From Octopus bimaculoides (lineage: Eukaryota), in assembly GCF_001194135.2 (NCBI RefSeq), contig NC_068983.1, forward strand, positions 22,419,327 through 22,483,326: 64,000 bases of DNA, given 5' to 3'. Under the pieces are notes generated by a model. That model did not search any database and was not told where the DNA came from. It saw only the letters and a list, made by a program, of their open reading frames with translations. Positions 36,275 to 53,049 of this stretch are shown here, piece by piece (within the stretch, counting starts at the first letter, position 1; every line of letters starts with the position of its first letter). A program made the translations under genes and the position numbers.

Positions 36275-37719
36275 GCTTAGCACAGATTTCATCTATCAAA
36301 CTCACTCAAAAGACATTAAATGTCCTAGGGTTATAGTAAAAGACACTCGCCCATTCTATTTAACACTGATTGTGAAGGTCGATGTGCTCAACTAATTTAC
36401 AACATAGTCAAGCATTCAAACATTACAAACTATAAAGCTTAGGTGTTAAATGCATATGAACAAGGCACATCATTCTACTTGCTTCAGTCAGCAAGGCTGA
36501 CAAAGCATTGACTAAGAGCAGATTGGATTTCTTTAATAGTTGGATGCTTAACAATAGAAAAGACATCCAGCTGTAAAAGTAATTTGCAAAAACAATATGC
36601 AAAAGCAATGAGCTGAAGAAGGAAAAAAAAAAAGAACTATCTTATTCATGGAAGCATCAATGGAAATACATGCAACAAATGCGTGTGTGTAAGCATGTAT
36701 GACTGTATTGAATGAAATAATGCTTAGTCTTATGATGGTATACAAAGATGTTGTCAACCTGCAAAACAATGCAGGTAATTCAGTGTTCAAACAAAAGGAG
36801 CAACAATTTAATCCAGGTGAGAGAATCTCACAAGACCACACTTCTCATAATGCATACATAATTTTGCAAACAAAAATCATTTTAATTAATTGTACCGTCA
36901 CTTTCTTGAGTTCAAAGCACACGTACTAAAACTACAGGATAATCCAGTAGTACACCAGCAGATTACATAAGATTATTTCTGTTACCATAGCAATACCTCA
37001 TGAGCAATTAAAACTAATCCAATCAAGTGAAAAAAAAAATACTTAATTATGATACAGTGCTGTGCACCTGAGTAATGAAAAGATCTAAAAACAAAAACAA
37101 AAATCAAAGGCCATGTTTATGAGAAAACATCTAGTCAAGATGGCTGAAAAACTAAAAATAAAATTAATAAAAACTTAGAAAAAGTTTAAACAGCAAAGAA
37201 AAAAAACAAAGCTAAATTCAATATGAACATAATCCACACTATAATCCACAGCTTAAGGCCAAATAATAGGATGAGAAGACACATCAACATGAATGAAGAG
37301 GAGAAAAAGAGAGAGAGAGACTAATATATGTCAAAGAAACAACATAGGAATGAAGACTCATGGGAGTTATTTTTCGTCTTCAGTTAGTTCTTTGAAGTAT
37401 CATCCAGTCCATCATTGCTGCTGCTGCTATTAACAACAATAACAGCAGCAGCATCCTTAATTTGTTTAGGGATTTTTTTGTTTTTTTGTTGTTGTCTTTT
37501 AATGCAGAAGACAGCATGGAATTTTTAAGTCAGTCATTTATCAATTTAAACAGTCGAAGAAATGGAGGTAAAGTCAGTTCAATTGGAAAACTGAATTTTT
37601 GAGTGAGAGCACTTCATTTTAACACACTCACAAACAAACAAAAAGCAAATTCTAGAAACTCAAGAATAATAGAGATTAGTAAAAAAAAACAAAAAAAAAA
37701 AACAACTAAGAAATAATTA

Positions 37720-52732: not shown

Positions 52733-53049
52733 ATAAAAACAAATAGTAAATGAGTATATGCATATATACGTACAGGTATGTGCATACCGACATCCACCTG
52801 TATGTATAGGTGCATATCTGCGTACAGGACATTGCAAACAAAACGTAGACAAGAAAACACACAAGCCACATAGAGAACATTTTCCTTCATCAGCTACCCC
52901 CATTTTAACTCCGGCGTTTCGAAGAGCTGGGTAGGACGCATCGTTAAAACGGCTCCTCCCATGGACCGCAAATTAAATTTGTATACACAAATTAAACCTT
53001 GCCATGGAGGAATGTAGTGGCGGACAAAAAACAAGACAGGAAAACAAAT
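52733..53049 (-). mobile_element. Unclassified CpG-rich element (Penelope-like or retrozyme-like?) running into a gap
   Basis: Complex, CpG-retaining sequence with sharp borders, unlike its flanks; carries the hammerhead core motifs and a long hairpin. Confidence 0.55.
52887..52958 (-). ncRNA. Candidate hammerhead ribozyme with non-circularly permuted (pseudoknotted) topology
   Basis: 5'-GAGGAGC CGUUUUAAC GAU GCG UC^ CUACCC A GCUCUUC GAAA CGC CGGA GUUAAAAUG G GGGUAG CUGAUGA-3'; full core plus P1 6 bp, P2 7 bp, P3 4 bp + 9 bp. Confidence 0.72.

What the first reader, a model, noticed from the sequence alone, without database searches (positions are those of the whole stretch)
52887..52958. 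Complete hammerhead ribozyme core in a non-circularly permuted, triple-pseudoknot order
Seen (minus strand): CUGAUGA 52893-87, GAAA 52920-17, and a GUC cleavage triplet with the predicted cut between 52935 and 52934. P1 is CUACCC(52934-29)/GGGUAG(52899-94), flush against C17 and C3. P2 is GAGGAGC(52958-52)/GCUCUUC(52927-21), giving the conserved G10.1-C11.1 pair. P3 is GCGU/ACGC, extended past a GAU/CGGA internal loop (tandem G.A, k-turn-like) by a 9-bp helix CGUUUUAAC/GUUAAAAUG. The arm order is 1-2-3-1'-2'-3', so all helices cross, and the backbone break falls between A9 and G10.1. Established: types I-III are circular permutations and cannot give this order; natural non-circular permutations of hammerheads have been reported, so it may match a described motif. 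Inference: the distal ends of the three helices meet in a second junction with 0-1 nt linkers, and the P1-P2 link could replace the usual loop I/II contact. A fallback P2 (A-inserted GGA/UUC after CUGAUGA) is only 3 bp. It lies on the inferred host-transcript strand, so it could cut the intron co-transcriptionally.
Basis: partly seen in the sequence, partly recalled or inferred. Interest (0 to 1): 0.92.

Follow-up and report, generated by a model that had tools for sequence, protein, structure and literature searches.

The report
Rearranged hammerhead look-alike in octopus DNA
A 72-base stretch of octopus-type DNA holds every conserved piece of a hammerhead self-cutting RNA in a scrambled order close to a recently described rearranged type. 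One core strand is split and no related copy was found, so it is most likely a coincidence that only a simple test-tube cleavage assay can settle.

Summary
On the minus strand, 52958-52887 carries CUGAUGA, GAAA, GUC and four helices (6, 7, 4 and 9 bp) flush with the core.

In that class a fourth helix ties stems I and II. The candidate is that four-helix architecture rotated: type SGC's free ends are closed by GAU, and the chain is opened between A9 and G10.1. No validated hammerhead splits the CUGAnGA/stem II strand.

The evidence for function is thin:
- No relative was found in any collection I could search, so covariation cannot be tested.
- The region is single copy in the window.
- The stem II 5' strand has a stronger competing partner upstream (-14.9 vs -8.9 kcal/mol).
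- Nested folding is no better than shuffles.
- No host gene was found.

Decoy-core controls in the real sequence give about 1e-4 such constellations per 64-kb window, which is a few per octopus-sized genome.

Verdict: most likely fortuitous (about 0.68). About 0.15 that it is a real split-block SGC-like ribozyme. It is cheap to test in vitro.

The parts
52952..52958 (-). GAGGAGC: proposed stem II 5' strand (10.1-10.7). It lies 71 nt upstream of A9 instead of following it.
   Evidence: Pairs with 52921-52927 (6 Watson-Crick + 1 G.U, duplex -8.9 kcal/mol). It is also the 3' arm of a stronger hairpin with 53002-53012.
52943..52951 (-). It is the counterpart of the 3' strand of the type-SGC fourth helix, which follows 10.x.
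   Evidence: Published alignment.
52940..52942 (-). GAU: linker or internal-loop strand. It closes what are the free 3' and 5' ends in type SGC.
   Evidence: compared.
52935..52939 (-). GCGUC: stem III strand 16.4-16.1 plus C17. The predicted cut is 3' of 52935.
52929..52934 (-). CUACCC: stem I strand 1.1-1.6.
   Evidence: duplex -8.1 kcal/mol with 52894-52899.
52928..52928 (-). A: 1-nt linker from stem I to stem II (2-3 nt in the published type-SGC RNAs).
52921..52927 (-). GCUCUUC: stem II strand 11.7-11.1.
52914..52920 (-). GAAACGC: G12 A13 A14 plus stem III strand 15.1-15.4.
52910..52913 (-). CGGA: linker or internal-loop strand between stem III and the fourth helix (0-44 nt in type SGC).
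52901..52909 (-). GUUAAAAUG: the other strand of the 9-bp fourth helix, lying between 15.x and 2.x as in type SGC.
52894..52900 (-). G linker plus GGGUAG: stem I strand 2.6-2.1.
52887..52893 (-). CUGAUGA: core C3-A9. The chain leaves the core after A9.
52879..52886 (-). AGGAAAAU: holds the fallback contiguous stem II (inserted A + GGA). It also pairs with GUUUUCCU 53038-53045 in the nested minimum-energy fold.
   Evidence: GGA/UUC duplex +1.8 kcal/mol.
53002..53012 (-). UUCCUCCAUGG: upstream competitor that pairs with CCAUGGGAGGA (52954-52964) and sequesters the stem II 5' strand.
   Evidence: duplex -14.9 kcal/mol. Present in the minimum-energy and centroid structures of the 180-nt fold.

Best explanation
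This is most likely a fortuitous constellation in single-copy, non-coding octopod DNA. A local imperfect hairpin (stem III plus the 9-bp helix) has a 17-nt loop and two flanks that happen to complete a hammerhead core on paper.

If the minus strand is transcribed, I expect the RNA to populate ordinary nested folds. The hairpin forms, GAGGAGC is held by its stronger upstream partner, and CUGAUGA/AGGAAAAU sits in a long-range stem. I expect no cleavage, or only very slow cleavage, and no selected function.

Shown: the motif, its chance frequency, the competing pairings and the absence of detectable relatives. Inferred: the lack of function.
For: - Chance rate is about 1e-4 per 64-kb window from decoy cores in the real sequence. 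That is a few per 2-3 Gb genome, no rarer than any plausible rate of true, never-before-seen split-core hammerheads.
- The weaker version is common: core plus two flush helices occurs at 0.2 per window, and a second example sits at 36557-36650 on the + strand.
- The CUGAnGA/stem II strand is split. That strand is contiguous in every aligned sequence I read, and the defining paper assumes it cannot be interrupted.
- The stem II 5' strand has a better partner upstream: -14.9 vs -8.9 kcal/mol. Its pairing probability in P2 is 0.003-0.015 in nested ensembles.
- Folding energies are no better than shuffles: z = +0.87 for 106 nt and -0.75 for 180 nt.
- The region is single copy in the window.
- No relatives were found in viral, JGI metagenome or GTDB contigs, nor among 5.8 billion proteins via six-frame ORFs, and the adjacent ORFs are not on record. 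There is therefore no covariation.
- The authors of the permuted class expected false positives from descriptor searches and accepted only candidates with covariation.
Against: - Four helices totalling 26 bp, only two of them G.U, are all flush with a perfect core. 0 of 3778 decoys reached this.
- The fourth helix has exactly the connectivity that is required for cleavage in type SGC.
- When rotated so that A9 joins G10.1, the sequence passes the same descriptor as the validated SGC-1 and SGC-3.
- An extra nucleotide between A9 and G10.1 is tolerated in HRIMA-1 and is conserved in metazoan Penelope-element hammerheads, so backbone continuity there is not rigid.
- Nested-fold statistics and Rfam are blind to this class: a genuine type-SGC RNA gets no Rfam hit.
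- The absence of relatives is weak evidence, because no eukaryotic genome collection could be searched by DNA.
Confidence: 0.68

Rival explanations
1. It is a working self-cleaving hammerhead of a new connectivity. It keeps the type-SGC four-helix fold but is circularly permuted, so the chain is open between A9 and G10.1. Stem II forms with the upstream strand, the A9.G12 and G8.A13 pairs stack on it across the nick, and the 9-bp fourth helix holds stems I and II together. Cleavage occurs after C17 (52935).
For: - Perfect core and four flush helices.
- Element-by-element correspondence with the validated type SGC, including 9-bp fourth helices and 0-2 nt linkers.
- The rotated sequence passes the descriptor.
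- An inserted nucleotide at A9/G10.1 is tolerated in natural hammerheads.
- A single-sequence descriptor hit without covariation (GCS-1) did cleave in vitro.
- The chance rate is only about 1e-4 per window.
Against: - No precedent for a split block C.
- The two tails leave the core at the metal-binding A9/G10.1 site.
- A stronger competitor exists for the 10.x strand.
- The stem I to stem II linker is 1 nt, against 2-3 nt in the family.
- It is single copy, and there is no conservation or expression evidence.
- Genome-wide, a few such matches are expected by chance.
Confidence: 0.15
2. It is a regular type-SGC hammerhead with block C intact. Stem II is the contiguous A-inserted GGA/UUC after CUGAUGA, and the upstream GAGGAGC is irrelevant.
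For: - S-G-C order.
- One inserted nucleotide after A9 is the rule in HRIMA-1 and in Penelope-element hammerheads.
- G10.1-C11.1 is kept.
Against: - Stem II would be 3 bp including a G.U, with duplex energy +1.8 kcal/mol.
- The fourth-helix 3' strand does not follow 10.x. The nearest downstream option, which I read off the sequence and did not compute, is a 6-bp CGUUUU about 37 nt away, against 1-6 nt in the family.
- The 9-bp helix with the upstream strand would then be unexplained.
Confidence: 0.04
3. It is a relic DNA copy of a small circular or multimeric RNA that carried a type-SGC hammerhead, linearised inside the core when it was copied into the genome. It would no longer be functional.
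For: Joining 52887 to 52958 gives a 72-nt unit that is a complete type-SGC hammerhead. Natural SGC RNAs are thought to sit on circular RNA replicons.
Against: - There is no tandem remnant. Read off, the flanks do not continue the unit; only AGGA after A9 resembles GAGGA.
- 72 nt is far below any known replicon or retrozyme.
- No second copy in the window and no match in metatranscriptome or viral collections.
Confidence: 0.03
4. Only the local hairpin (stem III plus the 9-bp helix, 52951-52901) and the neighbouring hairpins are real structure. They would belong to some other element, such as a transposon end or a small-RNA precursor, and the hammerhead letters are incidental.
For: The hairpin is the only part supported by nested folding, with pairing probability 0.4-0.65 in 200-250 nt context. 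It has adjacent hairpins at 53012-52954 and 52993-52976.
Against: - Fold energies do not differ from shuffles.
- There is no Rfam family.
- There is no other copy in a window that is full of repeats.
- Hairpins of this size occur at about 1% of positions.
Confidence: 0.05

Closest known systems
Type-SGC hammerhead ribozymes (HRIMA-1 motif and variants; Eckert, Friedrich, Weinberg & Weinberg, NAR 2023, PMC10085705)
   Same: - The order is cleavage-site block, then GAAA block, then the 2.x-CUGAnGA strand.
- All core nucleotides are present, and all stems cross one another.
- A short linker runs from stem I directly into stem II.
- A fourth helix forms between the segment separating 15.x from 2.x and the segment next to 10.x. 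It is 9 bp here and 4-12 bp in the family.
- Linkers at the distal junction are 0-2 nt.
   Different: - The 10.x strand and the fourth-helix partner lie at the 5' end instead of the 3' end, so the chain is broken between A9 and G10.1. The family's own termini are joined by GAU.
- Stem III is 4 bp (about 4-6 bp in the aligned rows).
- The stem I to stem II linker is 1 nt (2-3 nt in the family).
- Stem I differs in sequence from HRIMA-1's conserved AUGUU/AACAU.
- It sits in an animal genome, not in metatranscriptomic virus-like RNAs.
- It is a single sequence without covariation or assay.
Type-CSG and type-GCS hammerheads (same paper)
   Same: They are also non-circular permutations with crossing stems. 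GCS-1 is a single sequence without covariation, which is the same evidential status as this candidate, and it cleaved only partially in vitro.
   Different: In both, the three blocks are intact. Here the sequence upstream of GAGGAGC has no 2.x-CUGAnGA, so it is not CSG.
Canonical type I/III hammerheads of animal genomes (Penelope-like elements, retrozymes, Schistosoma SINE, intronic HH9/HH10)
   Same: The catalytic core, the GUC site and the G10.1-C11.1 pair are the same. The setting is an animal genome, possibly an intron. Penelope-element hammerheads carry an extra nucleotide between 9 and 10.1 (PMC4209133).
   Different: Those are nested three-way junctions, are usually multi-copy or deeply conserved, and are recognised by Rfam models. 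This candidate has no Rfam match, is single copy in the window and cannot be drawn without crossing helices.

Membership tests
Hammerhead ribozyme (any type) | Conserved core: C3 U4 G5 A6 N7 G8 A9, G12 A13 A14, A15.1-U16.1, H17 | tested here: met
   CUGAUGA 52893-87, GAAA 52920-17, U52936, C52935.
Hammerhead ribozyme (any type) | Three helices flush with the core, with a G10.1-C11.1 pair | tested here: met
   P1 6 bp, P2 7 bp, P3 4 bp, all flush. This holds on paper only.
Hammerhead ribozyme (any type) | Each of the three core strands (blocks C, G, S) is uninterrupted | tested here: not met
   Blocks S and G are intact. Block C is split: 10.1 lies 71 nt upstream of A9. The contiguous alternative is 3 bp at +1.8 kcal/mol. 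The rule is stated in PMC10085705.
Hammerhead ribozyme (any type) | Site-specific self-cleavage 3' of H17, abolished by core mutation | not testable with these tools
   Needs in vitro transcription and a cleavage assay.
Hammerhead ribozyme (any type) | Match to curated covariance models | tested here: inconclusive
   No hammerhead hit at gathering score, nor at E<=10 locally or E<=1 window-wide. A genuine type-SGC RNA (L001) is also missed at E<=10, so the negative result is uninformative.
Type-SGC hammerhead | 5'-to-3' order S, G, C | tested here: inconclusive
   S, G and the 2.x-CUGAUGA half of C are in that order. The 10.x half of C precedes S.
Type-SGC hammerhead | Fourth helix joining the 15.x-to-2.x linker with the segment adjacent to 10.x (required for cleavage in SGC-3) | tested here: met
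   GUUAAAAUG 52909-01 pairs with CGUUUUAAC 52951-43, which directly follows 10.7.
Type-SGC hammerhead | 10.x follows CUGAnGA after 0-1 nt | tested here: not met
   Only A + GGA (3 bp) follows. When the sequence is rotated in silico the descriptor is satisfied with offset +1.
Type-SGC hammerhead | Covariation in stems I-III and the fourth helix across homologues | not testable with these tools
   No homologue was retrievable. Octopod genomes cannot be searched by DNA here.
   Read: G42.A10 and A41.G11 are possible next to the 9-bp helix. That leaves C13 and G12 opposite U40, which is a 2+1 remainder and not a 3-nt bulge. Whether the loop bends is unknown.

The most novel reading that the evidence does not exclude
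The 72-nt element is an active hammerhead whose CUGAUGA strand and stem II strand are not covalently contiguous. It would be a rotation of the type-SGC four-helix fold, opened inside the catalytic core, sitting in an animal genome. The three-block rule for hammerhead permutations would then be too strict, and descriptor searches that assume intact blocks would have missed a class.
Probability: 0.15. Interest if true: 0.75.

Novelty: not a real feature. Interest (0 to 1): 0.38.

Why it matters
If it cleaved, it would be the first hammerhead with a break inside a core strand, and the first non-circularly permuted hammerhead reported from an animal genome. That would widen the search space for ribozymes, because all published permutation searches assume three intact blocks. 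It would also give engineers a new way to split the enzyme.

If it is a coincidence, as I think more likely, it is a useful calibration point. In a repeat-rich 2-3 Gb genome, a perfect core with four flush helices is expected a few times by chance. A paper fold without covariation or an assay is therefore not evidence of a ribozyme.

Tried and rejected
- **Steric impossibility.** I first judged the fold impossible, because a 16-layer stem III stack would have to be joined by 0-1 nt to the ends of stems I and II. I dropped this after reading that validated type-SGC RNAs have the same connectivity, down to 0 nt.
- **Rfam as a test.** There were no hits, but the control showed that Rfam 15 also misses a genuine type-SGC RNA. 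I gave it no weight.
- **Nested-fold z-scores**. They are not significant, but they are weak evidence for a pseudoknotted class. Validated SGC RNAs reach only z = -1.3 to -2.6.
- **Relatives by DNA pattern.** Nothing in viral, metagenome or prokaryote-genome collections.
- **Relatives through six-frame ORFs.** Nothing.
- **Other assemblies, through exact ORFs next to the motif.** Not on record.
- **Part of the abundant SINE-like repeat or another repeat in the window.** No.
- **tRNA or tRNA-like.** None.
- **Host gene.** No Pfam hit in 10 long ORFs. GC-richer islands did not look coding by eye. I did not pursue the orthologous intron because no exon could be anchored.
- **Back-splicing to join A9 to G10.1.** Read off, there is no AG/GU at the required positions.
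- **Type-CSG reading.** There is no CUGAnGA upstream of GAGGAGC.
- **Planted or foreign insert.** Unlikely, because the stem II strand is embedded in an inverted repeat with the native upstream flank.

Full report
**What is there.** The window is a draft eukaryotic assembly with 8 N gaps, about 35% G+C and many microsatellites. It is from an octopod. A hAT-like ORF at 821-1129 is 81-85% identical to Octopus vulgaris proteins, and pieces of a SINE-like repeat match predicted proteins of O. bimaculoides and O. sinensis.

On the minus strand the finding reads, 5' to 3' from 52958 to 52887:

GAGGAGC-CGUUUUAAC-GAU-GCGUC|CUACCC-A-GCUCUUC-GAAA-CGC-CGGA-GUUAAAAUG-G-GGGUAG-CUGAUGA

P1 has 6 Watson-Crick pairs. 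P2 has 6 plus one G.U and starts with G10.1-C11.1. P3 has 4 pairs, including A15.1-U16.1. The distal helix has 8 plus one G.U. My own descriptor script recovers this as the only complete hit in the window on either strand.

**What it corresponds to.** Eckert et al. (PMC10085705) divide the hammerhead into three blocks:
- Block S: 16.x-H17-1.x.
- Block G: 11.x-GAAA-15.x.
- Block C: 2.x-CUGAnGA-10.x.

They validated the non-circular orders SGC (583 sequences, with covariation, cleavage and compensatory mutants) and CSG (2 sequences). They also found one GCS sequence.

Their alignment shows type SGC as S-(2-3 nt)-G-(0-44 nt)-IV5'-(0-2 nt)-2.x-CUGAnGA-U-10.x-(1-6 nt)-IV3'. Helix IV is 4-12 bp, ties the distal ends of stems I and II together, and is required for cleavage.

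The candidate has S, then a 1-nt linker, then G, then CGGA, then a 9-nt strand, then G, then 2.x-CUGAUGA. That is the SGC order, and the 9-nt strand pairs with the segment directly adjacent to 10.x.

The difference is that 10.x and its helix IV strand lie at the 5' end. The candidate is the type-SGC four-helix architecture rotated: the family's free ends are closed by GAU, and the chain is open between A9 and G10.1. When I rotate the sequence in silico it passes the same descriptor as the validated SGC-1 and SGC-3.

This also removes my first objection, that 0-1 nt linkers are sterically impossible. Cleaving SGC RNAs have the same connectivity, and the authors note they cannot yet explain it.

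**Why I do not accept it as a member.**
- Block C is split. The paper treats the blocks as uninterruptible, and block C is contiguous in every aligned sequence I read, with at most one inserted nucleotide after A9. A conserved extra nucleotide is also typical of animal Penelope-element hammerheads.
- The contiguous alternative here, A plus GGA/UUC, is 3 bp with a positive duplex energy, and it has no helix IV partner nearby.
- The upstream 10.x strand has a better partner. UUCCUCCAUGG (53012-53002) pairs with CCAUGGGAGGA (52964-52954) at -14.9 kcal/mol, against -8.9 for P2. AGGAAAAU, right after A9, pairs with GUUUUCCU (53045-53038).
- In nested ensembles only the stem III plus helix IV hairpin is populated (pairing probability 0.4-0.65, against about 0.01 for P2).
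- Fold energies do not differ from shuffles. This is weak evidence for a pseudoknotted class.

**Chance.**
- With G.U pairs allowed and any block order within +-100 nt, core plus P1>=6 plus P3>=4 occurs 0.20 times per 64-kb window in Markov sequences. With decoy cores in the real sequence the rate is 0.21. A second such hit exists on the + strand around 36557-36650.
- Requiring a stem II 5' strand of >=7 bp anywhere gives 0.005 per window. Three helices totalling >=17 bp gives 0.011.
- A >=9-bp helix at the helix IV geometry occurs at 1.05-1.3% of positions in this repeat-rich sequence.
- No decoy out of 3778 reached all four helices. The single apparent hit was the candidate itself, through a decoy pattern that matches CUGAUGA.
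- The product is about 1e-4 per window. That is significant for one window. However, an octopus genome of roughly 2.7 Gb (my own knowledge) holds about 42,000 such windows, so a few chance instances per genome are expected.
- The rate of real, never-observed split-core hammerheads cannot be assumed to be higher than that. That is why I keep the functional reading at 0.15 rather than near zero.

**Relatives and context.**
- The 250 bp around the motif is single copy in the window. It is not part of the ~180-bp SINE-like repeat, which has at least 25 copies here.
- A pattern keeping stem I, GAAA and CUGAUGA found nothing in viral, JGI metagenome or GTDB contigs.
- A six-frame ORF query found no homologous proteins, and the adjacent ORFs are not on record. 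Covariation, the criterion the field uses, therefore cannot be tested with these tools. No eukaryotic genome collection is searchable by DNA here.
- Rfam gives no ribozyme hit anywhere in the window. A genuine HRIMA-1 RNA fetched as a control (L001) is also invisible to Rfam 15, so this counts for nothing.
- I found no evidence for a host gene. There was no Pfam hit in 10 long ORFs and no convincing exon. A>T on the + strand in 27 of 32 bins is compatible with minus-strand transcription but does not prove it.
- An N gap begins 91 nt upstream of the motif, so part of the context is missing.

**Verdict.**
- There is no evidence that it is a ribozyme. One defining feature of every known hammerhead is not met.
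- Most likely it is a fortuitous constellation (0.68).
- A real split-block SGC-like ribozyme remains possible (0.15). It is cheap to test, and the authors' single-sequence GCS-1 shows that such hits can cleave.
- Smaller rivals: an intact-block SGC with a 3-bp stem II (0.04), a relic of a circular RNA copy (0.03), and an unrelated hairpin element (0.05).

Noticed in passing
window 821-1129 (-): A hAT-type transposase C-terminal fragment, 81-85% identical to Octopus vulgaris 'SCAN domain-containing protein 3-like' proteins. This places the window in an octopod genome. Pfam gave no hit at E<=0.01.
   Followed up: partly
window, e.g. 6850-7027, 13186-13377, 24255-24413, 44624-44797, 50803-50999, 52534-52735: A SINE-like repeat of about 180 bp, with at least 25 copies in both orientations in 64 kb (75-91% identity). 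It accounts for most of the long 'ORFs' in the window.
   Followed up: partly
window 52418-52484 and 52495-52561: These two stretches are 100% identical and flank the 10-N gap 52485-52494. This is most likely an assembly duplication at a scaffold join.
   Followed up: no
window 15696-16290: A minisatellite with period 32 (higher-order 129), about 18 copies at 82-86% match. It produces the 230-350 aa repetitive ORFs on the minus strand.
   Followed up: partly
window 36557-36650 (+): A second, weaker hammerhead-like constellation in G-C-S order: GAAA at 36557, CUGAAGA at 36613, cleavage-site H17 at 36644, P1 5 bp, P3 4 bp, and no stem II. It illustrates the 0.2-0.5 per window background.
   Followed up: yes
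window 53045-52879 (-): The motif sits inside a run of nested complementarities: UUCCUCCAUGG/CCAUGGGAGGA, a 7-bp hairpin at 52993-52976, and GUUUUCCU/AGGAAAAU. Overall stability is not above shuffles (z = -0.75). Whether this is a small foldback element is unknown.
   Followed up: partly
L001 254-326 (-), contig Ga0265779_101469: A genuine HRIMA-1 type-SGC hammerhead from a JGI sample is not recognised by any Rfam 15 model, even at E<=10. The permuted class appears to be missing from the library.
   Followed up: yes
window 52754-52826 and 42020-42500, 45295-45370, 49410-49700: Sub-threshold hits to the mir-297, mir-3149 and mir-466 models. All lie on TG/CA/TA-rich simple repeats that fold back on themselves, and all are far below gathering scores.
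   Followed up: no
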